Shown: positions 7,487 through 34,103 of the stretch, one piece after another
How positions within the stretch are numbered: position 1 is the first letter of the stretch
How the letters are laid out: every line of letters starts with the position of its first letter
Assembly: GCA_035221665.1 (NCBI GenBank)
Contig: CM069172.1
Coordinates: 744,001-808,000 of the forward strand
Length of the DNA stretch: 64,000 nucleotides
Direction of reading: 5' to 3'
Origin: Okamejei kenojei
Lineage: Eukaryota
Position numbers and translations under genes: made by a program
Notes under the pieces: generated by a model
Told to the model about the DNA's origin: nothing
Databases searched by the model: none
Seen by the model: the letters and a program-made list of their open reading frames with translations, nothing else

Positions 7487-7547
7487 GTCTCCTCCCCTTC
7501 TCGCCTGTCTCTCGCTCTGCGTTTCTCGAGCAGGTCGGGGCGCTGTG

Positions 7548-7554
7548 TATAAAA
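7548..7554 (+). promoter_or_regulatory. H4 TATA box
   Basis: TATAAAA about 60 nt upstream of the ATG, in the same context in all three H4 promoters. Confidence 0.8.
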
Positions 7555-7599
7555 GGAGACTGCAGCATTCGGCATTTTATTGTGCAGCGACTTGAGTGA

Positions 7600-7920
<321 letters not shown>

Positions 7921-7954
7921 ATAATTCTTCCATTTCTCCAATCGACAAAACAAA

Positions 7955-7970
7955 GGCTCTTTTAAGAGCC
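7955..7970 (+). terminator. Histone 3' stem-loop (H4)
   Basis: GGCTCT-TTTA-AGAGCC preceded by CAAA. Confidence 0.93.
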
Positions 7971-8619
7971 AACCACCATTTCACGGAGTGAGCAGTGACC
8001 GGGGGCATGAAAATATGTAATTAATGAACTTTCAGTTATTGCCCGATCGCTGCACGCACTTGATTGATTGGTGTTTACAGCGGTTGTGATCAAAGACCTG
8101 ATAGCTCGCTGTAGGTTCTTTGGTTCTGATGAGGAAAGCTCGTTAGGCAGATATTCTGAAGCCTTAAACTGAGGAGTGGCTTATAGTAGACCATTCTCCA
8201 GGCCAAAGATCATAGAGGCTATCTCCATTCTCTCCTTTGCCACTTAATGCTTTTGTAAATTCAGCAACATAAAGGTCGACTCGAAACTTCCCCCGAGGCA
8301 TCTCCAGTCTCGGGCAGAGCTGAATATCGCCAGTTTCGACATCGGGTCTGTAAATTCGCACCGCATATTCAGACTTAGTGGAGTGGTTTACGGAGGTGAT
8401 TTAATATATTTCGAAATTAAGTTGGTAGGTACAAAATAGTACTGCTTTCACAATTGCAAGGGAGTATTTACCTCGGTTCCCGCTTGCTGTTAAATTGGCG
8501 GTTAATTTGAAATTGAACCAGTAGCCAACCACACTACAGTCTGTCCTCACTGGTTGTCTGAGCTCCGCCCGCCGCTCACAAATCTCTGTATTTGGTCACA
8601 AATAATATTTCCCCCGCGG

Positions 8620-8874
8620 AGCAAATATACTAGTGCGGAGGCGGAAGCCGGTTACGGAAACATCCTCGTAAAAATCAAAGTTCTTTAGTAAAAATCTTCT
8701 CCTTTTCAGAATTATAATTTATTAACACAAACTGTTCCCCCGCAACGTTGATTACACTGCGAGAGGTATAAGCAACGTCGGGTCGGAATTACTGAAATGA
8801 CCGACGTTGCGTACTACACGTCAGCCCATTGGATTTAGCAGGAGTGAACCATCTTGCTCGCTATAAGATCTTTG
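8620..8874. mobile_element. Truncated MITE-like insertion in the H4-H3 spacer
   Basis: Absent from the homologous spacer at about 28005-28030. Internal hairpin at 8772-8810. Confidence 0.55.
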
Positions 8875-8910
8875 CCTGAAACTGCCGGCCAGTTGCTGAC
8901 TGAGCTGCTG

Positions 8911-8996
8911 CCAATCGCAGCGCGGGAACGACATGTTTGCTTCTCTGCTACAGCCAATCTCACGCTGTGGGCCGGCCCTTCACCAGGGCTTTAAAA
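8911..8996 (+). promoter_or_regulatory. H3 promoter: two CCAAT boxes and a TTTAAAA TATA-like box
   Basis: CCAAT at 8911 and 8954, TTTAAAA at 8990-8996. Conserved in the second H3 copy. Confidence 0.75.
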
Positions 8997-9060
8997 GTCG
9001 GCTCCAGAGCCGGCTCCGTCATTCCAGTGCCTCTATTTCAGGCTGTAATACAACTGTTGA

Positions 9061-9477
<417 letters not shown>

Positions 9478-9500
9478 ACTCGGAACCAAGGACAACAAAA

Positions 9501-9541
9501 GGCTCTTTTAAGAGCCACCAATCCGGCAGTGGAAAGAGCTG
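9501..9541 (+). terminator. Histone stem-loop and U7-binding HDE (H3)
   Basis: GGCTCT-TTTA-AGAGCC at 9501-9516; AAAGAGCTG at 9533-9541. Confidence 0.93.
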
Positions 9542-10495
9542 TCCCTCCTGTTCGTTTGTCCTCTAACATTATGGTCCCGGCCTTTCTCACCAGAACTGGC
9601 ACCGCAGTCACAGCTGCCGAGCGGAGTCTGACCCCACGGACTCCAGTGTCCCGGACGGACCTGGTCGCCATGTGAATCCCTTAGTGACGCGTTCTGATCT
9701 AAAGAACAGGTCTTTGTTACGCATTTTCCGCGGGTTCGGCGCTTCACAAAAACAGCGAGTGGCTTTGAAACAGCCTTTGGGTCACTGGGTTGTATTTTTC
9801 CTTCATGTGCTTTGCCCAGCTGTTTCTTATCCCTTTATAGCGGAGGCCCGGGCTATCAGCGGGACTTTGTTGAGCAGGGTTCCGCGCTCGCTGTTGCTGA
9901 ACGGAATCACACGTCGCTGATCCAACGTCTCGGGTAGATCTATTGATGTTATAAATCTCATAACGACTCAAAATGTGTGTACGCGACCCGAGCAAACCAC
10001 GCCGGCTGAGAGGTCGTCTGCCCCATTGTGGAGCACTCTGCTTTCACCGACAACAAACACCAATAAAGCGTGAAAAATAACCGTCGGCCCCGCAGATATT
10101 GCACCAACCCACTCAATTTTAAAGAATGCAACATCGAAATTCATAAACAAGGATAACACTTTTTATTCTGTGATTAATGGTAAGATTTACATAATTTACA
10201 CGTTATACAGGAATTGCAGTGTTTAGCATATCAGCTAACCAATGAAAGTGATGTAAAATTCAACATATTTCAAACAATGATAGCCCCACCCCTGCTTCCC
10301 TAAAGAACACAATGTACAACGTATATACAATTATAAATACATTGTCATTTGCAATATTTTGTGCGGCTAACAATCAGAATTTCAGACTATGTATATAAAC
10401 GGGTGTATTCCTTCAAATACATAATTTAAGAAAATTATATACATTACTAATGTGCTACTTCTTGAACTTTCTTACACTTCCTTTTAACTTCCTTC

Positions 10496-11050
10496 TATTG
10501 CGTACAGTTTTGGTCTCCAAATCTGAGGAAGGACATTATTGCCATAGAGGGAGTGCAGAGAAGGTTCACCAGACTGATTCCTGGGATGTCAGGACTGTCT
10601 TATGAAGAAAGACTGGATAGACTCGGTTTATACTCTCTGGAATTTAGGAGATTGAGAGGGGATCTTATAGAAACTTACAAAATTCTTAAGGGGTTGGACA
10701 GGCTAGATGCAGGAAGATTGTTCCCGATGTTGGGGAAGTCCAGGACAAGGGGTCACAGCTTAAGGATAAGGGGGAAATCCTTTAAGACCAAGATGAGAAA
10801 GACTTTTTTCACACAGAGAGCGGTGAGTCTCTGGAACTCTCTGCCACAGAGGGTAGTTGAGGCCAGTTCATTGGCTATATTTAAGAGTGAGTTGGATGTG
10901 GCCCTTGTGGCTAAGGGGATCAGAGGGTATGGAGAGAAGGCAGGTACGGGATACTGAGTTGGATGATCAGCCATGATCATATTGAATGGCGGTGCAGGCT
11001 CGAAGGGCTGAATGGCCTACTCCTGCACCTAATTTCTATGTTTCTATGTT
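10496..11050 (+). mobile_element. CR1-type LINE 3' fragment (young subfamily)
   Basis: [22 protein letters not shown]-terminus and (TTTCTATG)n tail. Near-identical to the copies at 12.7, 20.4 and 39.0 kb. Confidence 0.9.
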
Positions 11051-12088: not shown

Positions 12089-13224
12089 ACTTAAAGCATA
12101 CGGTATTAGGGGTTCAGTATTGATGTGGATAGAGAACTGGCTGGGAAACAGGAAGCAAAGAGTAGGAGTAAACGGGTCCTTTTCACAATGGCAGGCAGTA
12201 ACTAGTGGGGTACCGCAGGGCTCAGTGCTGGGACCCCAGCTATTTACAATATATATTAATGATCTGGATGAGGGAATTGAAGGCAATATCTCCAAGTTTG
12301 CGGATGACACTAAGCTGGGGGGCAGTGTTCGCTGTGAGGAGGATGTAGGAGACTGCAAGGTGACTTGGATAGGCTGGGTGAGTGGGCAAATGTTTGGCAG
12401 ATGCAGTATAATGTGGATAAATGTGAGGTTATCCACTTTGGTGGCAAAAACAGGAAAGCAGACTATTATTTAAATGGTGGCCGATTAGGAAAAGGGGAGA
12501 TGCAGCGAGACCTGGGTGTCATGGTACACCAGTCATTGAAAGTAGGCATGCAGGTGCAGCAGGCAGTGAAAAAAGTGAATGGTATGTTAGCTTTCATAGC
12601 GAAAGGATTTGAGTACAGGAGCAGGGAGGTTCTACTTCAGTTGTACAGGGTCTTGGTGAGCTGGAGTATTGCGTGCAGTTTTGGTCTCAAAATCTGAGGA
12701 AGGACATTATTGCCATAGAGGGAGTGCAGAGAAGGTTCACCAGACTGATTCCTGGGATGTCAGGACTGTCTTATGAAGAAAGACTGGATAGACTCGGTTT
12801 ATACTCTCTGGAATTTAGGAGATTAAGAGGGGATCTTATAGAAACTTACAAAATTCTTAAGGGGTTGGACAGGCTAGATGCAGGAAGATTGTTCCCGATG
12901 TTGGGGAAGTCCAGGACAAGGGTCACAGCTTAAGGATAAGGGGAAATCCTTTAAGACCGAGATGAGAAAGACTTTCTTCACACAGAGAGTGGTGAGTCTC
13001 TGGAACTCTCTGCCACAGAGGGTAGTTGAGGCCAGTTCATTGGCTATATTTAAGAGTGAGTTGGATGTGGCCCTTGTGGCTAAGGGGATCAGAGGGTATG
13101 GAGAGAAGGCAGGTACGGGATACTGAGTTGGATGATCAGCCATGATCATATTGAATGGCGGTGCAGGCTCGAAGGGCTGAATGGCCTACTCCTGCACCTA
13201 ATTTCTATGTTTCTATGTTTCTAT
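12089..13224 (+). mobile_element. CR1-type LINE, RT 3' half and tail
   Basis: [11 protein letters not shown] and KFADDTK motifs; (TTTCTATG)n tail. Confidence 0.92.
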
Positions 13225-15499: not shown

Positions 15500-15660
15500 A
15501 CAGAGTATAGACTTGGTGACCTGTTTCCAAATGGTTTTGTAAGCTTAGGAACATTATTAACAATTCCTGCAACAGTAGCTTCTGCAGAGGTCATTTAGCA
15601 AACTCAAGTCGATTAAGAATTATGTAAGGTCTACAGTGTCTCAGGAATGTCTTGTGGATT
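15500..15660 (+). mobile_element. hAT transposase C-terminal dimerisation remnant
   Basis: Reads FPN..LLTIPATVASAE/SFSKLKSIKNYVRSTVSQE across a frameshift. Confidence 0.65.
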
Positions 15661-15806
15661 TGGCCAGGCGAAGTATTCAAAGTCAAAGTCAATTTTATTC
15701 GTCACTTACACCCAAAGGTGCAGTGAAATGAATTTGCCAGCAGCGGTTCACTTAAAGACCACTCAATACACAATAAAATTGAACACAAACATCCACCACA
15801 GCATTC

Positions 15807-15944
15807 GTGGAAATTTGGGGGAAAGAAATGTCTAAACTGTATTGATCTATTGTACAGCCTCCGAAAATGTCGGATGGATTTTCCGCAAGGTTAATGTATT
15901 GTATATATTTATCATTCGAATAAAGTATATTTTGAAATTAAAAA
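15807..15944 (+). mobile_element. Short 3'-end copy of the Tx1 family
   Basis: Matches the 3' UTR at about 21131-21270. A-tail and 12-bp TSD ACCACAGCATTC (15795-15806, 15945-15956). Confidence 0.9.
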
Positions 15945-15952
15945 ACCACAGC

Positions 15953-15990
15953 ATTCTTACCTGGCAGGGGAGAGACTTTGATCACCAAGG
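15953..15990 (+). pseudogene. RNU1: U1 snRNA 5' fragment (nt 1-38), retro-copied
   Basis: ATTCTTACCTGGCAGGGGAG..GATCACCAAGG versus U1 ATACTTACCTGGCAGGGGAGATACCATGATCACGAAGG. Confidence 0.88.
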
Positions 15991-16040
15991 ATACTTACCT
16001 GGCAGGGAGAAACCGTGATCAAAAAGGCTGTGCTCCCAGG
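15991..16040 (+). pseudogene. RNU1: U1 snRNA 5' fragment (nt 1 to about 51), second variant
   Basis: ATACTTACCTGGCAGGGAGA..GATCA..AGG..TCCCAGG. Confidence 0.9.
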
Positions 16041-16094
16041 ATCGCTTCTCGGCCTTTTGGCTAAGATCAAGTGTAGTATCTGTTCTTATCAGTT
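16041..16094 (+). pseudogene. RNU2: U2 snRNA nt 1-54 as head of Tx1 copy A
   Basis: Exact vertebrate U2 5' end including the GTAGTA branch-point recognition sequence. The rest of U2 is absent. Confidence 0.95.
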
Positions 16095-19000
16095 CTGAGT
16101 GAAAGAGACTATCTGTTCTTATTAGAAAAGTTCTGCCGGTTCCTTGGGGACAAGGGCCGTGGATTGCGGAGCGAAATCGTCGAGGAGTCGGTCGGCTGCA
16201 GACTTAGAGGTGGATCCATGCTGGTTGGGAAACCAACCTAACACCTTATTCAGCCACAATGTCAGCAGGAGCAGGAGTGCAGGGTTTTTAGAATACCCTG
16301 CGAATAAGCGTCAAGGACCTCTGCAAGGGGACCCCCTTCTCACGAGACCTGTTCATGAAGGTCTTGCTAGAGGCCTGTAAATTTGAGGCCAAGGACATCT
16401 ACTGCCTCCAGGATTTTCCGGGTAACGGATATTTTGACGTTACCCTCAAGTATCCAACGGGATGGCAGAAGGTGATGGAAGTCTTCCTGGAGAGGGGAAA
16501 TGAAGCTCCACTGTCGCTGCTTAAAGTGCAGCTGCTCTTCACCCTCCCCACCCAGAAGGAAAGGTTCATTACGGTGCACATGTTTAACCCACATGTGCCC
16601 GTAGTGGATGTCCTCACCTTCCTTGCTCGCTACGTTGAGGGAACAGGAGACTGTGTGGACATGAAGGACATGCACGGGATTTGGACCAGCAAGCGGCAAT
16701 TTAAGGTAAAGCTGAGGGTGGACAAGGATGGAGAAATTGTCCACCCCCCCTCGGTTTTCGCGATTGGAGGAAACCAAGAATACTTGAGCTATGTAGGGCA
16801 ACCCAGGCTGTGCAGGAAATGCAACAAGCCTGGGCATGTGATGGCCCAATGCACTGCAGGTGTCTGCAAAAACTGCAAGGCGGAGGGCCATGAGACAAAG
16901 GACTGTCAGGCCAGCAAGAACTGCAACCTGTGCGGGGAGGCAGGCCACCTTTACAGGGCTTGCCCTAAAAGAGCCTGCACCTATGCACAGGCAACAAGAG
17001 GGGCTGCTGCCAGCACCCCAAAGGGGGGCGAGGCACCCCCCACCACTGCCAAGACCCCATCAGAAAGAGGGACCACGGATGAGGACAGCCCAACCACCTT
17101 GAGGCCCCAAGTGCCAGAAGGAGACGCCCAGCATCCTGCCCAGGAGGGAGAGTCGATGGAGGGGGGGGGGAACAGCAGGACAAATGGACAACGGTGAAGT
17201 ACAAGAAGAGGGATCAGCCCAAAGAGCCGAGGCCGGAAAGAGTGGTAAGTCAAGAAGTAAATCACAAAAAAGGTGTCTTTCTCTTACAGAAGGCAGCAAC
17301 CTCTCCTCCTCGTCGGAGGATGAGGCGACCGGGAAGTCCCAACGAGGGAGGCAGAGGAAGAAAATGGGGGAGGAAAAGATGATCACTTCCCAGCCTCAGG
17401 AGACCGAGAGCAGAGAAGTGGCCGAGGGGCTCCAGCCCCAGGACATCGGGAGCAGCGCAGTGGTCGAGGGGCTCCAGCCCCTGGAGACAGGAATCATCAC
17501 AGCGGCCAGTGGGCCCGAGCTCTGGGCGACCGGGAGCATTGCAGCGGCCCATGGGCCCCAGCTCCGGGCGACCGGGAGCAGCGCAGAGGCCATTGCGCTC
17601 CAGCTGCAGGAGACAGAGGAAGCGGCGTGCCCAAAAGGGGATGGAACGAGAAGGCCCCCCCCAACGACACCTTTGGTTACGCCACCTGATACTCACCTCA
17701 CCGCTGGATTCCTGAGCCCAGGAAAGCTGAGGCAATTCACCGAAGCGGTGGGAATGAGGGGACATGGAAATGGTCAGTGACTCTAAAGACAATGGAGCTC
17801 AAACTGGCATCTTTAAACGTGCGCAGTATAAAGAGCTCTGCGCGATGTGTTAATGCCTTACAGTACCTGGCCAAGGTCAAGGCAGATGTGACTTTTCTTC
17901 AGGAGTGCGGGCTGCCACACCTCCACTGCTATCTGAGGTGGTTGCGATGGTGGCCCCACGGACTGTCTGTGTGGTCGGGGGGGAATGACTGTCGTGCTTC
18001 CGGCCTGGGGATTTTGCTGCGGGGTGGGAACTTCACCATCACTGAGGTCAGGGAAGTGGTTGGAGGGCGTCTCCTCGTGGTGGATGTTATGTACCATGGC
18101 TCTCTGCTCCGGCTGATAAATGTGTATGCCTCACCCACGCAGAGCGAGCGGCTGGCCGTTCTCCAGCAGCTCCCAGTGCTGCTGGCCACGTCCCGGCAGC
18201 TCGTTCTGGCCGGTGACTTCAACTGCATCATTGATGCGGCTGGACGATCCGGCAGTGCCGACAGCAGACTGGACAGCACGTCCAAGTTCCTGATGGAGAT
18301 GGTAAAAGACGCAAAGCTGCGTGACGCCTTCAGCGACCCTGCAGGCGGGTCCCAGCCGCAGTTCACCTGGTCGAGATCGGACGGTTTAGTCCGATCTCGG
18401 ATAGACTTTGTCTTCACGACGAAGGCCGTCACGGTGAGACACACTGACCTCACGCCAGTGTTCTTCTCTGACCATTGCCTCCTTCAGGCTTCCTGTCACT
18501 TACAGGAGGACCGGAAGGCAGGCAGAGGGACACTCTGGTGGGAAGCAACCAAGGAGTACATTAAGAGGTTCTTCATAATTAAAGGGGTTCAGAGAGCAAG
18601 ACAGAGCCAGAGGGAATTGTGCCTACTCCAGACAGATTTGCAACAACTGCTCCTTCTGCAGTCGAGTGGGGTGGATGTGAGGGAGGAACTTAGAGAGTTG
18701 AAGGACCGGCAAGCTCAGCTCTTCGCCTCTGAATCCTCCAAGATCATCTTCCGATCCAGGGTCCGTCATGTGGAGCAGGATGAGAGGTGCTCACGTTTCT
18801 TCTTCCATAAAGTTCACAGGGGGAGCTCTGTGATGAACACTTAGGGAGGAGGACGGCACGGTAGCATCCTCACAGACAGACATGCTGAGGATCTGCAAAT
18901 CCTTTTACACAGATTTGTAGGACCAAAAGACCACAGACAGTATCTCCTCCCAGAACTTCCTGTCCACAATCAATGAGGTTTTGGAGGACAGCAAGCGGGA

Positions 19001-21286
19001 GAGTCTGGACCAACCACTGACCCTAGAGGAGCTGACTGCTCCATCCGTTCCTTTGACTTGAATAAACGTCCCGGAAGCGATGGCTTACGGGCCGAGTTGT
19101 ATTTGGCTCTGTGGGACTGGATGGGCCCGGACCTGCTAGAAGTGTACAACGACATGCTTCTAGCTGGTAGCATGTCAGACTCCATGAGGAAGGGCAACAT
19201 CACCCTAATCTACAAGCAGAAGGAGGAGATGAAGGACATAAAGAATTGGAGACCCATAACACTCTTGAATGTAGACTACAAGATTCTGTCTAAGGCCATC
19301 GCCAACTGGGTCAAGTCTGCTCTGGGACAGGTGATCCACCTGGACCAAACCTGTGCTGTACCTGGCAGGAAAATCTCAGACAGCCTAGCACTGCTGAGAC
19401 ATACCATCGCCTACGTGCAGGGCAGACGGGTGGATGCCTGTCTAGTCAGCTACGACCAGGAGAAGGCCTTCGACAGGATTTTGCACACGTACATGAGGGA
19501 CGTGCTCTTCAAAATGGGATTTGGGGAGGGAATCAGGAATTCGATCAAACTGTTCTACACCAACATCCGTAGTGCAGTCCAAATCAATGGATGGGAATCA
19601 GACAGTTTCCCTGTAAGGTCTGGAGTTAGGAACGGTTGCCCTCTCTCTCCTGTCTTGTTTGTCTGCTGTATTGAACCTTTTGCCGAATCCATCAGGAAGG
19701 ATGCTGGCATAAGAGGAGTGACATTGCCAGGCAGTGGGGGCATTCAAGTAAAGACCTCCCTGTACATGGACAATGTCGCTGTCTTCTGCTCGGATCCAGG
19801 GTCGGTCCGCAGACTGATTAGTATCTGCGACCAGTTTGAGTCGGCCACGGGAGCCAGGGTGAACCGCAGGAAGAGCGAGGCCATGCTCTTTGGCAACTGG
19901 ACCGACAGATCTTCCGTCCCCTTCACCATCAAGCCTGACTTCTTGAAGGTGCTGGGGATCTGGTTCGGGGGGGCTGAGGCATGTAACAAAAATTGGCTGG
20001 AGCGGATAGCCAGGGTGGGGAGGAAGCTGGAGCTGTGGAGGCAATACTCCCTCTCCATAGCGTGAAAGAATTTGGTCATCAGGTGTGAGGTGCTCTCGGG
20101 GCTGCTGTACTGGGCACAAGTGTGGCCTGTCCCTCCCTCATACGCCACAGGGATCACTCGGGCCATCTTCCAGTTCATCTGGGGGTCGAGGATGGACCGG
20201 GTGCGAAGGGCCACAATGTACAAGTCAGCAGACAACGGGGGTAAAAGCGTGCCCAAAGTCGCCCTCATTCTGATGGCCACCTTCGTGTGTGGCTGCATCA
20301 GGCAGAGTGTAGAGTCAAGGCACGTGGGCACCAAGTGTCACTACCTGCTGAGGATCTACCTGTCCCCGGTGTTGAGAAGGATGGGCCTGGCTCAGGGTCC
20401 CTGGTACGCTTTAGAAACATAGAAACATAGAAATTAGGTGCAGGAATAGGCCATTCAGCCCTTCGAGCCTGCACCGCCATTCAATATGATCATGGCTGAT
20501 CATCCAACTCAGTATCCCGTACCTGCCTTCTCTCCATACCCCCTGATCCCCTTAGCCACAAGGGCCACATCCAACTCACTCTTAAATATAGCCAATGAAC
20601 TGGCCTCAACTACCCTCTGTGGCAGAGAGTTCCAGAGACTCACCACTCTCTGTGTGAAAAAAGTATTTCTCATCTCGGTCTTAAAGGATTTCCCCCTTAT
20701 CCTTAAGCTGTGACCCCTTGTCCTGGACTTCACCAACATCGGGAACAATCTTCCTGCATCAGAGGACACGGTGATTTACGGACTGTTCCCAGGGACACAT
20801 TCAGAGGCTGACATCGAGTGCTGCTGGAGGGTCATCAACTCGGTAAAAGACGCCCTTTGGTCTGCCCGGGCATTGTTCACCACCCAGCTGAGCGAGATGT
20901 GCGTCAGGGAATGTTGCCGACTGGCCCGCTGCAGACTGCAGGAGTACGTGCTGAGGGACGCACTGATGCTCGGTACAGCCAACGCCAAGGCTCGGTGGGG
21001 GAGGGCCACAGTCTAAGGTCCTTCCGCTGCTGGAAATGGGGGGCACGGTATGGTGGAGACGTCCCTCAATATAAGGGAAGGTTTCCCACGCCATTGTGCC
21101 ACATGAGTGGCACGAGTGGGGGACTGATTTGTGGAAATTAGGGGAAAAGAAATGTCGAAACTCTATTCATCAATTTGTACAGCCTCCGAAAATGTCGGAT
21201 GGATTTTCCGCAAGGTTAATCTATTGTATATATTTATCATTTGAATAAAGTATATTTTGAAATAAAAATTAAAAAAAAAATAAAAA
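16095..21286 (+). mobile_element. Tx1/Keno-like non-LTR retrotransposon, copy A (both ends present, disrupted)
   Basis: ORF1 at about 16259-17780 with three CCHC knuckles. ORF2 from 17792 with APE endonuclease (GDFN, SRID, SDH) and RT (WRPITLLNVDYKIL, YMDN). Poly-A tail. TSD ATTCTT (15953-15958, 21287-21292). Confidence 0.93.
20412..20760 (-). mobile_element. Young CR1 3' fragment nested in Tx1 copy A
   Basis: Reverse complement of the CR1 tail; replaces part of Tx1 ORF2. Confidence 0.9.
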
Positions 21287-21879
21287 ATTCTTCACTTTGG
21301 TGGAAGGCAACAAGTTTCATCCAATCCTCCTCCTTTGTTCATCCGTAGTCGGGGCCCTGACCCCTCCGTAGTCGCCGCTATGGATGGCTGGATGTACAGG
21401 CCCTCTCCTTGCGATGATCCAAACTGCGACGTCAGGACGGACAAATGCACTCTGCGGCTTGGCACCTACCGGCGACCGAGGCTTCAGGATGTTATAGTCC
21501 GCAGGCCGGTGGTCAGACCTCATCTCTGGCGATACCCGGCAAGGGATCCCAGGCTCCAGATATTCATTTAACCCGTTCGTGGATCTCTTCCTCCATCCCA
21601 CGCCGTAACGGGGAAATGTTTACATATTCCTGTAGGATTTCTCGTGAATACCGTGTTTTGAAAATTAGAAAATTTGGTTGATTATTTCCCTGCTTTTTTA
21701 GTAAGAAACATTAAAAAAAAATAAAATCAAACTGCTGCATGAGTCACAGTACCATCTCAGAGATGTCGAATCACAATGGATCTCATTTACAAATGACATC
21801 ACAATGGGACAGGGGTGGGAGTTTGCATCCTTCACGTGGTCCCACGAATGCAATCAACCTGGTATGCACAATCAAATAA

Positions 21880-22505: not shown

Positions 22506-22992
22506 TAGAAAACATAGAAACATAGAAAATAGGTGCAGGAGTAGGCCATTCGGCCCTTCGAGCCTGCACCGCCATTCAATATGATCATGGCTGATCATCC
22601 AACTCAGTATCCTGTAACTGCCTTCTCTCCATACCCCCTGATCCCTTTAGCCACAAGGGCCACATCTAACTCCCTCTTAAATATAGCCAATGAACTGGCC
22701 TCAACTAACCTCTGTGGCAGATAATTCCAGAGACTCACCACTCTGTGTGTGAAAAATGTTTTCCTCATCTCGGTCCTAAAGGAATTTGCCCTTATCCTTA
22801 GACTGTGACCCCCTGTTCTGGACGTCCCCAACATCGGGAACAATCTTCCTGCATCTAGCCTATCCAACCCCTTAAGAATTTTGTAAGTTTCTATAAGATC
22901 CCCCTTCAATCTTCTAAATTCTAGTGAGTATGCCATGTCTATCCAGTCTTTCCTCATATGAAAGTTCTGATATCCCAGGAATCAGTCTGGTG
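22506..22992 (-). mobile_element. CR1 3' fragment
   Basis: Same C-terminal ORF and tail as the other CR1 copies. Confidence 0.88.
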
Positions 22993-24249: not shown

Positions 24250-24593
24250 GAGCTCTGAAGATGAATGGTAAGAAGACGAATCAATTCTCACTATTTAGGC
24301 TGGTTGACCTTTAATGTGGAATGCGTACCTCTGAAACTTTGCGGGACGCTGAATCTTGGGTACATTGTCAGCAAACCGTTGAAAATTGGCGGTTGCAGTA
24401 AACCGGGGGGAGGAGCTGGGGATGAGAGGCCGCTCTCTGCTCTCTCTGTCACTCTGACTGTCTCCTCCCCTTTTCGCCTCTCTTTTTCTCGAGCAGGTCG
24501 GGCGCTGTCTATAAAAGGAGATAGCAGTAATGTTTGTTAGTAATCGGCCTTTTATTCTAGCGCCTTGAGTGAAGCAGTATCATGTCTGGCAGA
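24250..24593 (+). pseudogene. H4: Orphan H4 promoter plus first four codons (MSGR), truncated by Tx1 copy B
   Basis: Homologous to the other two H4 upstream regions. TATAAAA at 24510-24516; ATGTCTGGCAGA at 24582-24593. Confidence 0.88.
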
Positions 24594-24596
24594 CAT

Positions 24597-27053
24597 TCTA
24601 AAGACAATGGAGCTCAAACTGGCATCTTTAAACATGCGCAGTATAAAGAGCACTGCGCGATATGTTAATGCCTTACAGTACCTGGCCAAGGTCAAGGCAG
24701 ATGTGACTTTTCTTCAGGAGTGCGGGCTGCCACACCTCCGCTACTATCGGAGGTGGTCGCGATGGTGGCCCCACGGACTGTCTGTGTGGTCGGGGGGAAA
24801 TGACTGTCGTGCTTCCGGCCTGGGGATTTTGCTGCGGGGAGGAAACTTCACCATCACTGAGGTCAAGGTTGGAGGGCGTCTCCTCGTGGTTGATGTTATG
24901 TACCGTGGCTCTCTGCTCCGGCTGATAAATGTGTATGCCTCACCCACGCAGAGCGAGCGGCTGGCCGTTCTCCAGCAGCTTCCAGTGCTGCTGGCCACGT
25001 TCCGGCAGCTCGTCCTGGCCGGTGACTTCAACTGCATCATTGATGCGGCTGGACGATCCGGCAGTGCCGACAGCAGACTGGACAGCACGTCCAAGTTCCT
25101 GATGGAGATGGTAAAAGATGCAAAGCTGCGCGACGCCTTCAGCGACCCTGCAGGCGGGTCCCAGCCGCAGTTCACTTGGTTGAGATCGGACGGTTTAGCC
25201 CGATCTCGGATAGACTTTGTCTTCATGACAAAGCCCGTCACGGTGAGACACACTGACCTCACGCCAGTGTTCTTCTCCGACCACTGCCTCCTTCAGGCTT
25301 CCTGTCACCTACGGGAGGACCGGAAGGCAGGCAGAGGGACGTGGAAGTTAAACACAAAACTGTTGACCCCAGAGAATGTCGAGGAGCTAAAGAGGGACTA
25401 CGCATGTTGTAGAACGGTGAGGCCCCTCTTTGATTCCCCCACACTCTGGTGGGAAGCAACCAAGGAGAACATTAAGAGGTTCTTCATAATTAAAGGGGTT
25501 CAGAGAGCAAGACAGAGCCAGAGGGAATTGTGCCAACTCCAGACAGATTTGCAGCAACTGCTCCTTCTGCAGTCGAGCGGGGTGGATGTGAGGGAGGAAC
25601 TTCGAGAGTTGAAGGACCGGCATGCTCAGCTCTTCACCTCTGAATCCTCCAAGATCATCTTCCGATCTAAGGTCCGCCATGTGGAGCAGGATGAGACGTG
25701 CTCACGTTTCTTCTTCCATAAGGTTCACAGGGGGAGCTCTGTGATGAACAGCCTTAGGGAGGAGGACGGCACGGTAGCATCCTCACAGACAGACGTGCTG
25801 AGGATCTGCAAATCCTTTTACACAAATTTGTATGACCAAAAGACCACAGACAGTACCTCCTCCCAGAACTTCCTGTCCTCAATCACGGAGGTCTTGGAGG
25901 ACAGCAAGCGGGAGAGTCTGGACCAACCATTGACCCTAGAGGAGCTGACTGGCTCCATCCGTTCCTTTGACTCGAACAAAACTCCCGGAAGCGATGGCTT
26001 ACCGGCCGAGTTGTATTTGGCTCTGTGGGACTGGATGGGCCCGGACCTGCTAGAAGTGTACAATGACATGCTTCTAGCTGGTAGCATGTCAGACTCCATG
26101 AGGAAGGGCAACATCACCCTAAGCTACAAGCAGAAGGGAGAGATGAAGGACATAAAGAATTGGAGACCCATAACACTCTTGAATGTAGACTACAAGATCC
26201 TGTCCAAGGCCATCGCCAACCGGGTCAAGTCTGCTCTGGGACAGGTGATCCACCCAGACCAAACCTGTGCTGTACCTGGCAGGAAAATCTCAGACAGCCT
26301 AGCGCTGCTGAGAGATACCATCGCCTACGTGCAGGACAGACGGGTGGATGCCTGCTTAGTCAGCTTGGACCAGGAGAAGGCCTTCGACAGGATTTTGCAC
26401 ACGTACATGAGGGACGTGCTCTCCAAAATGGGTTTTGGGGAGGGAATCAGAAATTGGATCAAACTGCTCTACACCATCATCCGAAGTGCAGTCCAAATCA
26501 ATGGGCGGGAATCAGAGTTTCCCTGTAAGGTCTGGAGTTAGGCAGGGTTGCCCTCTCTCTCCAGTATTGTTTGTCTGCTGTATTGAACCTTTTGCTGAAT
26601 CCATCAGGAAGGATGCGGGCATAAGAGGAGTGACATTGCCAGGCAGTGGGGGCATTCAAGTAAAGACCTCCCTGTACATGGACGATGTCGATGCCGACTG
26701 GCCCGCTGCAGACTGCAGGAGTACGTGCTCAGGGACGCACTGAAGCTCGGTGCAGCCAACGCCAAGGCTCGGTGGGGGAGGGCCACTGTCTAAGGCCCTT
26801 CCGCCGCTGGACATGGGGGGTTCGGTATGGTGGAGACGCCCCTCAAAAATAAGGGAAGGTATCCCAGCCACTGTGCCACATGAGTGGCACGAGTGGGGGA
26901 CTGATTTGTGGAAATTTGGGGAAAAGAAATGTCTAAATTGTATTGATCTATTTGTACAGCCTCCAAAATGTCGGATGGATTTTCCGCAAGGTTAATGTAT
27001 TGTATATATTTATCATTTGAATAAAGTATATTTTGAAATATATTAAAAAAAAA
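24597..27053 (+). mobile_element. Tx1/Keno-like copy B (ORF2 start to poly-A, with internal deletion)
   Basis: Open endonuclease-RT frame at 24607-26541, then a frameshift and a deletion after YMDD. 3' UTR and A-tail. Confidence 0.93.
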
Positions 27054-27343
27054 TATAACATAAATAGATCTACCCGAGACGTTGGGTCAGCGGCGTGTGA
27101 TTCTGTTCAGCAACAGCGAGCGCGGAACCCTGCTCAACAAAGTCCCGCTGATAGCCCGGGCCTCCGCTGTAAAGGGATAAGAAACAGCTGGGCAAAGCAC
27201 ATGAAGGATTCACATGGTAACCAGGTCCGTCCGGGACACTGGAGTCCGTGGGGTCAGACTCCGCTCGGCAGCTGTGACTGCGGCGCCAGTTCTGCTAAGA
27301 AAGGCCGGGAACATAAAGTTAGAGGACAATAAACAGAAGGGCA

Positions 27344-27384
27344 CAGCTCTTTCCACTGCCGGATTGGTGGCTCTTAAAAGAGCC
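27344..27384 (-). terminator. Histone stem-loop and HDE (H3 copy 2)
   Basis: Stem-loop at 27369-27384; AAAGAGCTG at 27352-27344. Confidence 0.92.
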
Positions 27385-27407
27385 TTTTGTTGTCCTTGGT
27401 TCCGAGT

Positions 27408-27824
<417 letters not shown>

Positions 27825-28528
27825 TCAACAGTTGTATTACAGCCTGAAATAGAGGCACTGGAATGACGGAGCCGGCTCTGGAGCCGACTTTTAAAGCCCT
27901 GGTGAAGGGCCGGCCCACAGCGTGAGATTGGCTGTAGCAGAGAAGCAAACATGTCGTTCCCGCGCTGCGATTGGCAGCAGCTCAGTCAGCAACTGGTCGG
28001 CAGTTTCAGGTCTGAGGCCGGCGGAGGAAATATTATTTGTGACCAAATACAGACAACCAGTGAGGACAGACTGTAGTGTGGTTGGCTACTGGTTCAATTT
28101 CAAATTGCCCGCCAATTTAAATGCAAACTGTAATCGCCGTGGGACATATTCCTTTGTAATTTTGCAGTCATTAAATCGGAATATGCCATGTGGATTTACA
28201 GACGCGAGACTAGAGATACGCGGCTGTTTCCCGGAGAGGTTTCGAGTCGACTTCAGTGTTGCTTGATTAAGTAATGTGGTTAAGATGGGAACGGATCGCC
28301 TGGTGAATGAACTACTACAGGTCTCCGCTAACAGTTTGAACCAAAGATTATAGAGTATCTTTGGTTTGAACCTGCACAGTATCGGCCTAATCTCACCTTT
28401 CTTTATCTGACAACGGCTGAACCCTGGAATCAATCAGCGAACTCTGCATGCAGCGGTCGAAAAATAGTAATTAATTCATGATAAATTCTCATACTTCAGA
28501 TCAGTAGTCCCCCTGTGAAATGGTGGGC

Positions 28529-28544
28529 GGCTCTGAGAAGAGCC
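28529..28544 (-). terminator. Histone stem-loop (H4 copy 2)
   Basis: GGCTCT-TCTC-AGAGCC. Confidence 0.88.
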
Positions 28545-28571
28545 TTTGTTTAATCGTTTGGAGAAATTATT

Positions 28572-29096
<525 letters not shown>

Positions 29097-29288
29097 TTAC
29101 TGACAATACACCCGAGACTCAGCATTGAACAAACTTTCACAGGCACGGATTCCACATTAAAGGTCAATATGTAATATTACTGCCTAAATACTCCGACGTT
29201 ACTTTGTTTCCTTCCCTTTCATCTACAGAACCTGTTCCCTCTCCCCAAACCGCTTCTCCCTAGACCTCACCATCTCCATCGCAGGTAA

Positions 29289-29515
29289 CAGACTACTGAC
29301 CGCCATCTACTACACACCCACTGACTCCCATGGCTATCTGGATTACACTTCTCTTCCCAACCTGCTTCCTGTAAGGACTCTATTCCCTACTCCCAATTCC
29401 TCCATCTGCACCCAGGATGAGGAGTTCCAAACCAGGGGGTCAGATGTCCTCATTCATTCGGGAAAGGGGGATCCCCTCTTCTAATATAGTTGAGGCTCTC
29501 ACCAGGGTGAGAGCC
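29289..29515 (+). mobile_element. Penelope-like fragment
   Basis: Homologous to 35205-35330 (YY.PTDSH.YLDYTS). Confidence 0.7.
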
Positions 29516-32500
29516 TCAACTATAGAACCTCAATAGATAGTGACACTTGGTGCCCACGTGCCTTGGCTCTACACTCCACCTGATGCAGCCACACACGAAG
29601 GTTGCCATCAGAATGAGGGCGACGTTGGGCACGCTTATACCCCCGTTGTCTGCCGACTTGTACATTGTGGCCCGTCGCACCCGGTCCATCCTTGACCCCC
29701 AGATGAACTGGAAGATGGCCCGGGTGATCCCTGTGGCGTAGGAGGGAGGAACAGGCCACATTTGTGCCAAGTACAGCAGCCCCGAGAGCACCTCACACCT
29801 GATGACCAAATTCTTTCCCGTTATGGAGAGGGAGCATTGCCTCCACAGCTCCAGCTTCCTCCCCACCCTGGCTATCCGCTCCAGCCAATTTTTGTTACAT
29901 GCCTCAGCCCCCCCGAACCAGATCCCCAGCACCTTCAAGAAGTCAGGCTTGATGGTGAAGGGGATGGAAGATCTGTCGGGCCAGTTTCCAAAGAGCATGG
30001 CCTCGCCCTTCCTGCGGTTCACCCTGGCTCCCGTGGCCAACTCAAACTGGCCACAGATACTAATCAGTCTGCGGACCGACCCTGGATCCGAGCAGAAGAC
30101 AGCGACGTCATCCATGAACAGGGAGGTCTTTACGTGAATGACCCCACTGCCTGGCAATGTCACTCCTCTTGTGCTCGCATCCTTCCTGATGGATTCGACA
30201 AAGGGTTCAATACAGCAGAAAAACAAGACAGGAGAGAGAGGGCAACCCTGCCTAACTCCAGACCTTACAGGGAAGTCCGATTCCCACCGATTGATTTGGA
30301 CTGCACCTGTCCCAGAGCAGACTTGACCCGGTTGGCGATGGCCTTGGACAGGATCTTGTAGTCTACATTCAAGAGTGTTATGGGTCTCCAATTCTTTATG
30401 TCCTTCATCTCCCCCTTCTGCTTGTAGATTAGGGTGATGTTGCCCTTCCTCATGGAGTCTGACATGCTACCAGCCAGAAGCATGTCGTTGTACACTTCTA
30501 GCAGGTCCAGGCCCATCCAGTCCCACAGAGCCAAATACAACTCGGCCGGTAAGCCATCGCTTCCGGGAGTTTTGTTCGAGTCAAAGGAATGGATGGAGCC
30601 AGTAAGCTCCTCTAAGGTCAGTGGTTGTTCCAGACTCTCCCGCTTGCTGCCCTCCAAGACCTCTGTGATTGAGGTCAGGAAGTTCTGGGAGGAGGTACTG
30701 TCTGTGGTCTTTTGGTTATACAAATCTGTGTAAAAGGATTTGCAGATCCTCAGCACGTCTGTCTGTGAGGATGCTACCGTGCCGTCCTCCTCCCTAAGGC
30801 TGTACATCACAGAGCTTCCCCTGTGAACCTTATGGAAGAAGAAACGTGAGCACGTCTCATCCTGCTCCACATGGCGGACCCCGGATCGGAAGATGATCTT
30901 GGAGGATTCAGAGGTGAAGAGCTGAGCTTGCCGGTCCTTCAACTCTCCAGGTTCCTCCCTCACATCCTCCCCGCTCGACTGCAGAAGGAGCAGTTGTTGC
31001 ACATCTGTCTGGAGTTGGCACAATTCCCTCTGGCTCTGTCTTGCTCTCAGAACCCCTTTAATTATGAAGAACCTCTTAATGTTCTCCTTGGTTGCTTCCC
31101 ACCAGCGTGTGGGGGAGTCAAAGAGGGGCCTCACCGTTCTCCAACATGCGTAGTCCCTCTTTAGCTCCTCGACATTCTCTGGGGTCAACAGTTTCATGTT
31201 TAACTTCCACGTCCCTCTGCCTGCCTTCCGGTCCTCCTGTAGGTGACAGGAAGCCTGAAGGAGGCAGTGGTCGGACACGAACACTGGCGTGAGGTCAGTG
31301 TGTCTCACCGTGATGGCCTTCGTCGTGAAGACAAAGTCTATCCGAGATCGGGCTAAACCGTCCGATGTCGACCAGGTGAACCGCGGCTGGGACCTGCCTG
31401 CAGGGTCTCTGAAGGCGTTGCGTTGCTTTGCATCTTTTACCATCTCCATCAGGAACTTGGACGTGCTGTCCAGTCTGCTGTCTGCACTGCCGGATCGTCC
31501 AGCTGCATCAATGATGCAGTTGGTCACCGGCCAGAACGAACTGCCGGGACGTGGCCAGCAGCACTGGGAGCTGCTGGAGAACGGCCAGCCGCTCGCTCTG
31601 CATGGGTGAGGCAGCAAAATCCCCAGGCCGGAAGCACGACAGTCATTTCCCCCCGACCACACAGACAGTCCGTGGAGCCACCATCGCGACCACCTCCGAT
31701 AGCAGCGGAGGTGTGGCAGCCCGCACTCCTGAAGAAAAGTCACATCTGCCTTGACCTTGGCCAGGTACTGTAAGGCATTAACACACCACGCAGTGCTCTT
31801 TATACTGCGCATGTTTAAAGGTGCCAGTTTGAGCTCCATTGTCTTTAGAGTCACTGACCATTTCCATGTCCCCTCATTCCCACCGCTTCGGTGAATTGCC
31901 TCAGATTTCCTGGGCTCAGGAATCCAACGGTGAGGTGAGTTTCAGGTGGCGTAACCAAAGGTGTCGTTGTGGGGGGGCCTTCTCGTTCCACCCCCTTTTG
32001 GGCATGCCGCTTCCTTTGTCTCCTGTAGCTGGGACCGAATGGCCTCTGCGCTGCTCCCGGTCGCCCGGAGCTGGGGTCCACTGGCCGCTGTGATGATCCC
32101 TGTCTCCAGGGGCTGGAACCCCTCGACCACTGCGCTGCTCCCGATGTCCTGGGGTTGGAGCCCCTCGACCGCTGCACTTCTCCCGATGTCCTGGGGCTGG
32201 AACCCCTCGGCCACTTCTCTGCTCTCGGTCTCCTGAGGCTGGGAGGTGATCGTTGTGGCCTCTCTCTTTTCATCCCCCGTTTTCTTCCTCTGCCTCCCTC
32301 GTTGGGACTTCCCGGTCACCTCATCCTCCGACGAGGAGGAGAGGTTGCTGCCTTCTGTAAGAGAAATATACCTTTTTTGTGATTTACTTTTTGACTTACC
32401 CCTCCTTTCCAGCCCTGGCTCTTTGGGCTGACCCCTCTTCCTGTACTTCACCGTTGTCCATTTCTCCTGCTGTTCCCCCTCCTCCATCGACTCTCCCTCC

Positions 32501-33554
32501 TGGGCAGGATGCTGGTCGTCTCCTTCTGGCACTTGGGGCCTCAAGGTGGTTGGGCTGTCCTCATCTGTGTTCCCTCTTTCTGCTGGGGTCTTAGCAGTGG
32601 TGGGGGGTGCCTCGCCCCCCCCCTTTGGGGTGCTGGCAGCAGCTCCTCTTGTTGCCTGTGCGTAGGTGCAGGCTCTTTTAGGGCAAGCCCTGTAAAGGTG
32701 GCCTGCCTCCCCGCACAGGTTGCAGTTCTTGCTGGCCTGACAGTCCTTTGTCTCATGGCCCTCCATCTTGCAGTTTTTGCAGACACCTGCAGTGCATTGG
32801 GCCATCACATGCCCAGGCTTGTTGCATTTCCTGCACAGCCTGGGTTGCCCTACATAGCTCAAGTATCCTTGGTTTCCTCCAATCGCGAAAACCAAGGGGG
32901 GGTGGACGATTTCTCCATCCTTGTCCACCCTCAGCTTTACCTTGACTTGCCGCTTGCTGGTCCAAATCCCGTGCACGTCCTTCACATCCACACAGTCTCC
33001 TGTTCCCTCAACGTAGCGAGCAAGGAAGGTGAGGACATCTACTACGGGCACATGTGGGTTAAACATGTGCACCGTAATGAACCTTTCCTTCTGGGTGGGG
33101 AGGGTGAAGAGCGGCTGCACTTTCAGCAGAGACAGCGGAGCTTCATTTCCCCTCTCCCGGAAGGCTTCCATCACCTTCAGCCATCCCGTTGGATACTTGA
33201 AGGTAACGTCAAAATATCCGTTACCCGGAAAATCCTGGAGGCAGTAGATGTCCTTGGCCTCAAATTTGCAGGCCTCTAGCAAGACCTTCTTCACGAACAG
33301 GTCTCGTGAGAAGGGGGTCCCCTTGCTGAGGTCCTTGACGCTTATTCGCAGGGTATTCCGAATACCCTGCACTCCTGCTCCTGCTAACATTGTGGTTGAA
33401 TAAGGTGTTAGGTTGGTTTCCCAACCAGCATGGATCCACCGCTAAGCCTGCAGCCGACCGACTCCTCTACGATTTCGCTCCGCAATCCACGGCCCTTGTC
33501 GCCAAGGGACAGCCAGAACTGTTCTAATAAGAACAGATAGTCTCTTTCACTCAG
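29516..33554 (-). mobile_element. Tx1/Keno-like copy C (5' end present, 3' truncated)
   Basis: ORF1 from 33390 with three CCHC knuckles. ORF2 endonuclease/RT pieces down to about 29520. Highly similar to copies A and B. Confidence 0.93.
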
Positions 33555-33608
33555 AACTGATAAGAACAGATACTACACTTGATCTTAGCCAAAAGGCCGA
33601 GAAGCGAT
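33555..33608 (-). pseudogene. RNU2: U2 snRNA nt 1-54 as head of Tx1 copy C
   Basis: Exact reverse complement of U2 nt 1-54. The flank is histone spacer, not a U2 promoter. Confidence 0.95.
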
Positions 33609-34103
33609 GTTATAAATCTCATAACGACTCAAAATGTGTGTACACGACCCGAGCAAACCATGCCGGCTGATTGCACTTCGGCCCCATTGTGGAGCACTCT
33701 GCTTTCAGCGACAACAAACACCAATAAAGCGTGAAAAAGAACCGTCGGCCCCGCAGATATTGCATCAACCCACTCAATTTTAAAGAATGCAACATCGAAA
33801 TTCAAAACACTTTATATTTCTGTCATTAATGATAAGATTTACATAATTTACGTTATACAGGGATTGCAGTGTTTCACATATCAGCTAACCATTGAAAGTG
33901 AAGTAAAATTCAATGCATTTCAAACAATGATAGCCCCACCCCTGCTTAACTTAAAGGAGAAAATGTCCAACGTATATACAATAATAAATCAATTGTCATT
34001 TGCAATATTTTAAGCACGGGGAGCGGTTCTGAACTGGCACCGCAGTCACAGTTGCCGAGCGGAGTCTGACCCCACGGGCTCCAGTGTCCCTGACGGACTT
34101 GGT
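33609..34103 (+). repeat. Duplicated histone-unit spacer fragments
   Basis: 33609-34010 matches about 9948-10360; 34031-34103 matches about 9593-9664. Confidence 0.85.

What the first reader, a model, noticed from the sequence alone, without database searches (positions are those of the whole stretch)
15953..16094. U1-U1-U2-LINE chimera: three snRNA 5' ends stacked on a Tx1 retrotransposon inside one TSD
Seen: U1 nt 1-38, a different U1 variant nt 1 to about 51, and U2 nt 1-54 are joined head to tail. They run directly into Tx1 copy A, and the whole unit is bracketed by TSD ATTCTT (15953-15958 and 21287-21292). Each snRNA starts exactly at +1, both internal junctions read AGG|AT, and the target ATTCTT mimics the U1 start ATACTT. 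Known: U6-L1 chimeras, U2-targeting Keno (Tx1 clade) and U1/U2-headed SINEU elements exist. Inference: the RT reached the capped 5' end, added C residues, and jumped twice onto GG in other snRNAs. That suggests the retrotransposon RNP assembles among snRNPs through its U2 head. It would be a serial snRNA-capture route and a possible precursor of snRNA-headed SINEs.
Basis: partly seen in the sequence, partly recalled or inferred. Interest (0 to 1): 0.85.

Follow-up and report, generated by a model that had tools for sequence, protein, structure and literature searches.

The report
U1 and U2 heads on LINE
A jumping gene (a Tx1-type LINE) in this cartilaginous-fish-like genome carries the first 54 letters of U2 spliceosomal RNA, and this copy also picked up two different U1-like RNA starts, a kind of 5' capture already described in crocodilians.

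Summary
Window 15953-16094 reads U1-like nt 1-38, a different U1-like nt 1-51 and U2 nt 1-54, head to tail, running into a 5.2-kb Tx1-type LINE (copy A). The hexamer ATTCTT brackets the unit.

Support from inside the window: a second insertion of the family starts exactly at U2 +1 and has a 6-bp TSD, confirmed by a paralogous empty site.

- A 139-nt Tx1 3' fragment lies directly upstream. Its own 11-nt TSD overlaps ATTCTT, so two insertions landed 7 bp apart.
- The two U1 pieces differ from each other more than the copy's age allows, so they came from two templates. They also look non-canonical.
- The phenomenon is published. Kojima 2015 describes U1- or U2-headed Tx1 LINEs, recurrent 5' addition of 3'-truncated U1/U2 pieces on Tx1-mobilised SINEU elements, and template switching as the cause.

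Best reading: the reverse transcriptase switched templates at the RNA 5' end, in one event or in successive ones.

The cap-added-C / GG-landing idea fits both junctions, but n=2. The "RNP among snRNPs" idea has no support.

The scan noted similar leaders on other DNA of this genome (unchecked).

The parts
15796..15806 (+). upstream copy of the 11-nt TSD CCACAGCATTC of the small Tx1 fragment
   Evidence: exact 11-nt direct repeat at both borders of the fragment
15807..15945 (+). independent 5'-truncated insertion: last 139 nt of the same Tx1 family with an A6 tail
   Evidence: 92% identical to 21127-21268 of copy A and 96% to 26904-27039 of copy B
15946..15956 (+). downstream copy of the 11-nt TSD; overlaps the first 4 nt of ATTCTT
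15953..15958 (+). 5' copy of the 6-bp TSD ATTCTT of copy A; also aligns with U1 nt 1-6 at 5 of 6 letters (microhomology)
   Evidence: chance p about 0.004
15953..15990 (+). U1-like piece 1, nt 1(7)-38, ends in AAGG
   Evidence: Rfam U1 21.3 bits, model positions 1-43
15991..16040 (+). U1-like piece 2, a different variant, nt 1-51 with one G missing; ends in CCCAGG; stem-loop I still pairs
   Evidence: Rfam U1 33 bits; exact 16-mer of the U1 start; RNAfold hairpin -9.8 kcal/mol
16041..16094 (+). U2 nt 1-54, the regular 5' end of this LINE family
   Evidence: Rfam U2 66.1 bits; the same head on copy C
16095..21286 (+). body of Tx1-type LINE copy A: 5' UTR; ORF1 (16355-17197: two ZCCHC3-type RNA-binding domains and CCHC knuckles); ORF2 in pieces (APE 17777-18844, RT 19058-20065); a nested 350-bp repeat at 20412-20760; A-rich tail
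   Evidence: Pfam; self-BLAST; ORFs broken
21287..21292 (+). 3' copy of the TSD ATTCTT
29523..33608 (-). copy C of the same family, 3'-truncated; begins exactly at U2 +1, next to the TSD TATAAC (33609-33614 on the + strand)
24597..27059 (+). copy B, holding the 3' part of the family (ORF2 start to tail), followed by the TSD TATAAC (27054-27059)
9948..9953 (+). paralogous empty site: GTTATA once, with the flanks of B and C contiguous around it

Best explanation
Copy A is one retrotransposed unit of a Tx1-type (Keno-related) LINE whose RNA normally begins at U2 +1. That 54-nt U2 head is the stretch of a U2 gene lying upstream of the Keno target site. It was most likely acquired when an ancestral element sitting in a U2 gene was transcribed from the U2 promoter (inferred). 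In copy A, the element's reverse transcriptase copied the RNA to its very first base. It then continued on a U1-like RNA from about nt 51 to +1, and then on a second, different U1-like RNA from nt 38 towards its 5' end. This is 5'-end template switching. The two switches happened either in this one insertion or in successive rounds, with the inner U1 piece inherited from the source element. The cDNA end, complementary to AUACUU, annealed to the top-strand overhang ATTCTT (5 of 6 letters), giving a 6-bp TSD. A second, 5'-truncated insertion of the same family landed 7 bp upstream; which came first is unresolved. The U1 templates were probably variant U1-like RNAs or U1-derived heads of other retroposons rather than the canonical U1 snRNA.
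For: Shown: the three pieces lie head to tail, and the inner two start at +1. The only direct repeat bracketing copy A lies outside all three pieces and is 6 bp (p about 0.004). The family's other full-length junction (copy C) starts at U2 +1 with no extra bases. Together with copy B's tail it shows a 6-bp TSD, verified by an in-window paralogous empty site. No other U1-like sequence exists in the 64 kb. U1 pieces 1 and 2 differ at 5 substitutions plus 1 indel in 32 nt, against about 1.5 expected from the A-private divergence of 2.4%, so there were two templates and slippage is excluded. The small fragment's 5' junction also shows microhomology (ATT) between TSD and element. From papers: the Keno 3' target flank begins at U2 nt about 38-40 (PMC6136364, PMC4640811). 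Crocodilian Tx1 families carry U1 or U2 heads, and 26 SINEU-2 copies carry independently added 3'-truncated U1-like 5' extensions attributed to template switching (PMC4494074).
Against: Only one locus could be studied. No reads, no orthologous empty site and no other genomic copies could be fetched. The TSD is only 6 bp, and its 5' copy overlaps both a U1-like start and the TSD of the neighbouring fragment. The U1 pieces look older or more divergent than the U2 head (0 changes in 54 nt). A rival can also explain this: U1 pseudogene fragments already present at the target. Whether there was one event or two cannot be decided.
Confidence: 0.68

Rival explanations
1. Inherited composite head: a source element (subfamily master) already carried U1 piece 2 plus U2, or all three pieces. 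Copy A is then a plain full-length copy, and there was no switching, or only one switch, at this insertion.
For: In crocodilians, composite snRNA heads were amplified as subfamilies (SINEU-1A to J; PMC4494074). Two switches in one event should be rarer than one. Unchecked notes of this scan report another Tx1/Keno copy with a U1+U2 leader in the same genome. The U1 pieces are more diverged than the U2 head.
Against: The other full-length copy in the window has the plain U2 head. No second copy with the same junctions could be examined. This rival changes only the timing, since the pieces would still have been added by 5' switching earlier.
Confidence: 0.35
2. Pre-existing DNA: two 3'-truncated U1 retropseudogene fragments already lay at the target, and a U2-headed LINE inserted just downstream of them. 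ATTCTT is then a chance match.
For: The U1 pieces differ from the vertebrate U1 known to me (from memory, not tool-checked) by 12-18%, more than the 2.4% private divergence of copy A. The U2 head is unchanged.
Against: No direct repeat sits at the U1/U2 border, while a 6-mer repeat sits exactly outside the U1 pieces (p about 0.004). It would take three coincidences: two U1 fragments each starting at +1, head to tail, and abutting U2 +1 to the base. No other U1-like fragments occur in 64 kb.
Confidence: 0.07
3. Assembly artefact: the stack is a mis-join of repeats in a repetitive histone cluster.
For: The window is rich in repeats and has four N runs. No sequencing run held even half of the sampled words of 15650-16350.
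Against: All junctions lie within 150 nt and join at exact RNA +1 positions, a biological signature that mis-assembly would not produce. The nearest N run is 7.8 kb away.
Confidence: 0.03

Closest known systems
SINEU elements and U1- or U2-headed Tx1-Mar LINEs of crocodilians (Kojima 2015, PMC4494074)
   Same: Tx1-group machinery related to Keno. 5' ends are made of U1 or U2 5' parts. 3'-truncated U1/U2 pieces were added repeatedly and independently, head to tail, onto existing snRNA-type heads. Added pieces often match other retroposon heads rather than the snRNA gene. Template switching is proposed. A U1 head ending near CAGG (about nt 51-56) is also seen in SINEU-2.
   Different: Here the carrier is an autonomous 5.2-kb LINE copy with three stacked pieces, whereas crocodilian Tx1 families are reported with a single U1 or U2 head. 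The host looks like a cartilaginous fish (best protein relatives in Mobula and Heterodontus), and the paper found no SINEU outside crocodilians. No Mariner target preference is seen, and no SINE derivative was found here.
Keno, the U2-gene-specific Tx1 LINE (Kojima and Fujiwara 2004, as cited in PMC4494074, PMC4640811, PMC6136364)
   Same: APE-type LINE of the Tx1 group. The 54-nt U2 head equals the part of U2 upstream of the Keno target site, whose 3' flank starts at nt about 38-40.
   Different: None of the three 3' junctions in the window is followed by U2 sequence, so the copies sit away from U2 genes. The defining target specificity is not met.
U6/L1 and other snRNA/L1 chimeric retrocopies of mammals (Buzdin 2002 and Garcia-Perez 2007, as cited in PMC4494074)
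   Same: A LINE reverse transcriptase switches from its template to a small nuclear RNA, and the chimera sits inside one TSD with the snRNA at the 5' side.
   Different: There the LINE part is usually 5'-truncated and the snRNA is copied from its 3' end. Here the LINE is full length, the switch occurs at its first base, and the acceptor is entered internally or at a truncated 3' end (nt 51 and nt 38), twice.
[quoted passage not shown]
   Same: It continues from the 5' end of one RNA onto another, helped by a few non-templated bases. This would explain GG at both junctions.
   Different: It is a biochemical property of another LINE clade and has not been shown for any Tx1 enzyme.

Membership tests
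Tx1-clade non-LTR retrotransposon | ORF2 with an N-terminal APE endonuclease and an RT, grouping with Tx1 rather than L1 in RT phylogeny | tested here: inconclusive
   APE and RT domains are present. A 658-aa ORF2 piece scores 417 bits (36% identity over 645 aa) to a Danio protein named 'transposon TX1 uncharacterized 149 kDa protein', against 159 bits to human L1 ORF2p. No labelled reference set was available for a clade tree.
Tx1-clade non-LTR retrotransposon | ORF1 with RNA-binding domains and CCHC zinc knuckles | tested here: met
   PF23057, PF23058, PF00098 and PF13696 in ORF1 of copies A and C
Keno (U2-targeting Tx1) | specific insertion into U2 snRNA genes, with the 3' flank being U2 from nt about 38-40 | tested here: not met
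   The 3' flanks of copy A, copy B and the small fragment are unrelated to U2. The B/C empty site lies in a histone-cluster spacer.
Keno (U2-targeting Tx1) | 5' flank or head equal to the U2 part upstream of the target site | tested here: met
   The head is U2 nt 1-54 in copies A and C. It is carried inside the element, not as a flank.
snRNA-headed retroposons with recurrent 5' addition (SINEU / Tx1-Mar type, Kojima 2015) | 5' end made of U1- or U2-derived sequence on an element mobilised by Tx1 machinery | tested here: met
   polyA-type tail and TSD
snRNA-headed retroposons with recurrent 5' addition (SINEU / Tx1-Mar type, Kojima 2015) | additional 3'-truncated U1/U2 pieces stacked head to tail, from different templates | tested here: met
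   Two U1-like pieces differ at 6 of 32 positions, p 0.005 for a single template.
snRNA-headed retroposons with recurrent 5' addition (SINEU / Tx1-Mar type, Kojima 2015) | recurrence at independent loci with different junctions | not testable with these tools
The metagenome scan gave only irrelevant zinc-knuckle hits. Only unchecked notes of other windows hint at recurrence.
Template-switch chimeric retrocopy (U6/L1 type) | the whole chimera inside one TSD with a single polyA tail at the 3' end | tested here: met
   ATTCTT at both ends, an A-rich tail only at 21260-21286, and no repeat at internal junctions. The TSD is short (6 bp).

The most novel reading that the evidence does not exclude
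Keno-group Tx1 reverse transcriptases have an ancient, intrinsic habit, shared from cartilaginous fishes to crocodilians. On reaching a capped RNA 5' end they add one or two C and re-prime on GG inside U1/U2-like RNAs, often serially. This would continuously create snRNA-headed leaders and be the birth route of SINEU-type SINEs. This locus would be a freshly caught double event on an autonomous element.
Probability: 0.2. Interest if true: 0.6.

Novelty: new member of a known kind. Interest (0 to 1): 0.36.

Why it matters
It places snRNA-headed Tx1 elements with stacked U1/U2 5' pieces in a second, very distant vertebrate lineage; the 2015 description found them only in crocodilians. That would argue that 5'-end template switching onto U1/U2-like RNAs belongs to this LINE group and is not a crocodilian oddity. 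Because the junctions here are base-exact and TSD-bounded, the locus offers a clean example for testing how the enzyme leaves a finished template (cap-derived bases, GG landing sites). It also bears on how snRNA-derived SINE heads arise. It does not by itself reveal a new mechanism.

Tried and rejected
So there is no read confirmation, copy-number profile or census of what precedes U2 +1.
2. The look-up of sequencing runs: 20 runs hold parts of the stretch, the best share of words is 0.37, and none reaches half. No conclusion was drawn.
4. The search for related loci in metagenome contigs with ORF1 returned only three bacterial-type contigs matching a 30-residue zinc-knuckle stretch. These are irrelevant.
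6. Rejected: one continuous chimera of small Tx1 fragment, U1, U1, U2 and LINE. The fragment has its own exact 11-nt TSD.
7. Rejected: slippage or duplication of one U1 head. The two pieces differ too much.
8. Rejected: filing the family as Keno proper. Its target specificity is not met.
9. Kojima and Fujiwara 2004 is not held in the library, and no supplementary files of Kojima 2015 are held. The exact crocodilian head sequences could therefore not be aligned.

Full report
WHAT IS THERE. Reading window 15700-16500 and splitting it by script gives, on the + strand:
- 15953-15990: 38 nt aligning to U1 snRNA from position 1. Rfam U1 scores 21.3 bits, E 4.8e-4, when 15900-15995 is searched alone.
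- 15991-16040: 50 nt aligning to U1 positions 1-51 with one G missing. Rfam U1 scores 33 bits, E 4e-5. The start is an exact U1 16-mer.
- 16041-16094: U2 positions 1-54. Rfam U2 scores 66 bits, above the gathering score.

Both internal junctions read AGG|AT. These are the only U1-like stretches in the 64-kb window, and U2-like stretches occur only at two LINE heads.

THE LINE.
- From 16095 to 21286 runs a decayed 5.2-kb non-LTR retrotransposon, copy A.
- ORF1 has two ZCCHC3-type RNA-binding domains and CCHC knuckles. ORF2 has an APE endonuclease and an RT, broken into pieces.
- A 658-aa ORF2 piece of a sister copy is 36% identical over 645 residues (417 bits) to a zebrafish protein named after Xenopus Tx1. 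It scores only 159 bits against human L1 ORF2p.
- The closest relatives are in Mobula (72%) and, for ORF1, in Heterodontus and Mobula. The genome is therefore probably that of a cartilaginous fish.
- I could not build a clade tree with labelled references, so 'Tx1-type' rests on these similarities.

THE FAMILY'S NORMAL 5' END AND TSD.
- Self-BLAST finds copy C (29523-33608, minus strand), which begins exactly at U2 +1. It also finds copy B (24597-27053), which holds the 3' part.
- The flank after B's tail and the flank before C's head are contiguous in a paralogous histone-cluster unit at 9925-9975. They overlap by the six letters GTTATA at 9948-9953.
- B and C therefore carry the two junctions of one insertion with a 6-bp TSD (TATAAC in element orientation) and no extra bases before U2 +1.
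- This in-window empty site shows that the family's full-length RNA starts at U2 +1, that it inserts away from U2 genes, and that 6-bp TSDs are normal for it.
- It agrees with an unchecked note on the same window (s1-880351).

- ATTCTT stands at 15953-15958 and, directly after the A-rich tail, at 21287-21292. A simulation with 2x8 allowed registers gives p about 0.004.
- The 5' copy coincides with U1 positions 1-6 at five of six letters (ATTCTT versus ATACTT). The simplest reading is microhomology: the top-strand overhang ending in ATTCTT annealed to the cDNA end complementary to AUACUU.
- It follows that 'starts exactly at +1' is shown for U1 piece 2 and for U2, and is only compatible for piece 1.
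- Directly upstream, 15807-15945 is a separate 139-nt 5'-truncated 3' end of the same family (92-96% identical to the 3' ends of A and B). It has an A6 tail and an exact 11-nt TSD, CCACAGCATTC (15796-15806 and 15946-15956).
- This TSD overlaps the first four letters of ATTCTT. Two insertions of the family therefore landed 7 bp apart. Either order gives the present sequence.
- The 11-nt repeat rules out the idea that the fragment is a further member of the same chimera.

AGE AND SOURCE OF THE U1 PIECES.
- In 1642 aligned columns shared by A, B and C, copy A has 2.4% private changes.
- Pieces 1 and 2 differ from each other at 5 substitutions plus 1 indel within nt 7-38. About 1.5 differences would be expected if both had been copied from one sequence at insertion (p 0.005). 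Two different templates were used, and slippage or duplication is excluded.
- I know the vertebrate U1 only from memory, so this count is not tool-checked. Against it, piece 1 differs at 4 of 32 positions and piece 2 at 9 of 51, while the U2 head shows no change in 54 nt in either copy.
- With 2.4% divergence, about 2 changes are expected in 82 nt, so 13 is far too many.
- Caveat: the species' own U1 genes were not available. At most one of the two pieces can be canonical.
- Piece 2 keeps a stem-loop I hairpin.
- The likely templates are variant U1-like RNAs or U1-derived heads of other retroposons. The 54-nt U2 head also lacks the Sm site (established knowledge).

ORIGIN OF THE U2 HEAD.
- Keno, the U2-gene-specific Tx1 element, has a 3' target flank starting at U2 nt about 38-40 (PMC6136364; PMC4640811: U2 downstream of Utopia starts at nt 39, identical to Keno).
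- A head of U2 nt 1-54 is what lies upstream of such an insertion if the TSD spans about nt 39-54.
- I infer that the head was acquired by co-transcription from a U2 promoter, not by switching.
- A second, imperfect copy of U2 nt 38-53 lies 15 nt further in, at 16110-16125. It may be a relic of that history (unexplained).
- The family fails Keno's defining feature, since none of the three 3' junctions is followed by U2.

MECHANISM.
- Shown: a full-length copy to the first base of U2; two further RNA-start pieces head to tail; a TSD outside all of them; two different U1 templates.
- Inferred: the reverse transcriptase, after finishing its template, continued on a U1-like RNA entered at nt 51. 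It (or an earlier round) then continued on another entered at nt 38.
- Both entry points follow AGG. By my own count in the remembered U1 sequence, GG ends about 10% of positions and AGG about 2.5%. Two of two is suggestive but post hoc.
- Non-templated C opposite the cap pairing with GG is plausible by analogy with R2 template jumping, but it has not been shown for any Tx1 enzyme.
- Whether both switches happened in this one insertion cannot be decided from one locus.

COMPARISON WITH WHAT IS KNOWN. Kojima 2015 (PMC4494074) reports the following in crocodilians:
- Keno-related Tx1 families have a U1 head (Tx1-2_Crp, Tx1-4_AMi) or a U2 head (Tx1-11_Crp).
- SINEU-1 subfamilies were built by at least two U1 and three U2 5' additions.
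- 26 SINEU-2 copies carry independently added, 3'-truncated U1-like 5' extensions that often match another subfamily's head.
- Template switching is proposed as the cause.
- The paper found no SINEU outside crocodilians. A whole-word search for SINEU from 2016 on found no later extension to other vertebrates in the held library.

This locus is therefore a new member of a known kind. It shows the same process on an autonomous LINE copy, with three stacked pieces, in a distant vertebrate lineage.

LIMITS.
- The metagenome scan was uninformative.
- Notes from other windows of this genome mention a U1+U2 leader on another Tx1/Keno copy and a Tx1 copy starting with a U1 15-mer (s1-880513, s1-880011). 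They are unchecked leads and I could not see their sequences.

Noticed in passing
window 24597-33614, with paralogue 7487-10360: Copies B and C carry the 3' and 5' junctions of one Tx1 insertion (TSD TATAAC), but they lie in opposite orientation and overlap by about 2.6 kb of element sequence. About 2.4 kb of inverted histone-unit DNA, including an H3 gene, lies between them. This looks like an inverted duplication or rearrangement of a histone repeat that already carried the LINE.
   Followed up: partly
window 24583-24630: The 5' breakpoint of copy B joins a histone H2A-like start (ATGTCTGGCAGA) to the element 10 nt before the ORF2 start codon. This creates a 658-aa open frame (24565-26541).
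   Followed up: no
window 20412-20760; also 10706-11050, 12877-13223, 22506-22855, 39075-39420: A repeat of about 350 bp occurs in five copies (92-99% alike). One is nested in the 3' part of copy A in inverted orientation. It is probably a young SINE-like element and shows no tRNA or snRNA match.
   Followed up: no
window 16110-16125: A second, imperfect copy of U2 nt 38-53 lies 15 nt after the U2 head in the 5' UTR, and is also present in copy C. It starts at about the position where Keno's 3' target flank begins. It may be a relic of an ancestral insertion in a U2 gene.
   Followed up: partly
window 15796-15958: Two independent insertions of the same LINE family lie 7 bp apart, with an 11-nt and a 6-nt TSD that overlap. 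This may be a local hot spot for the element's endonuclease. No shared target motif is evident among the three sites in the window.
   Followed up: partly
window 29485-29524: A 40-nt near-perfect palindrome sits exactly at the truncated 3' end of copy C.
   Followed up: no
window 16041-16094 and the head of copy C: The U2 head has no change in 54 nt in two copies that differ by about 6% elsewhere. This hints that the head is conserved in the active lineage.
   Followed up: no
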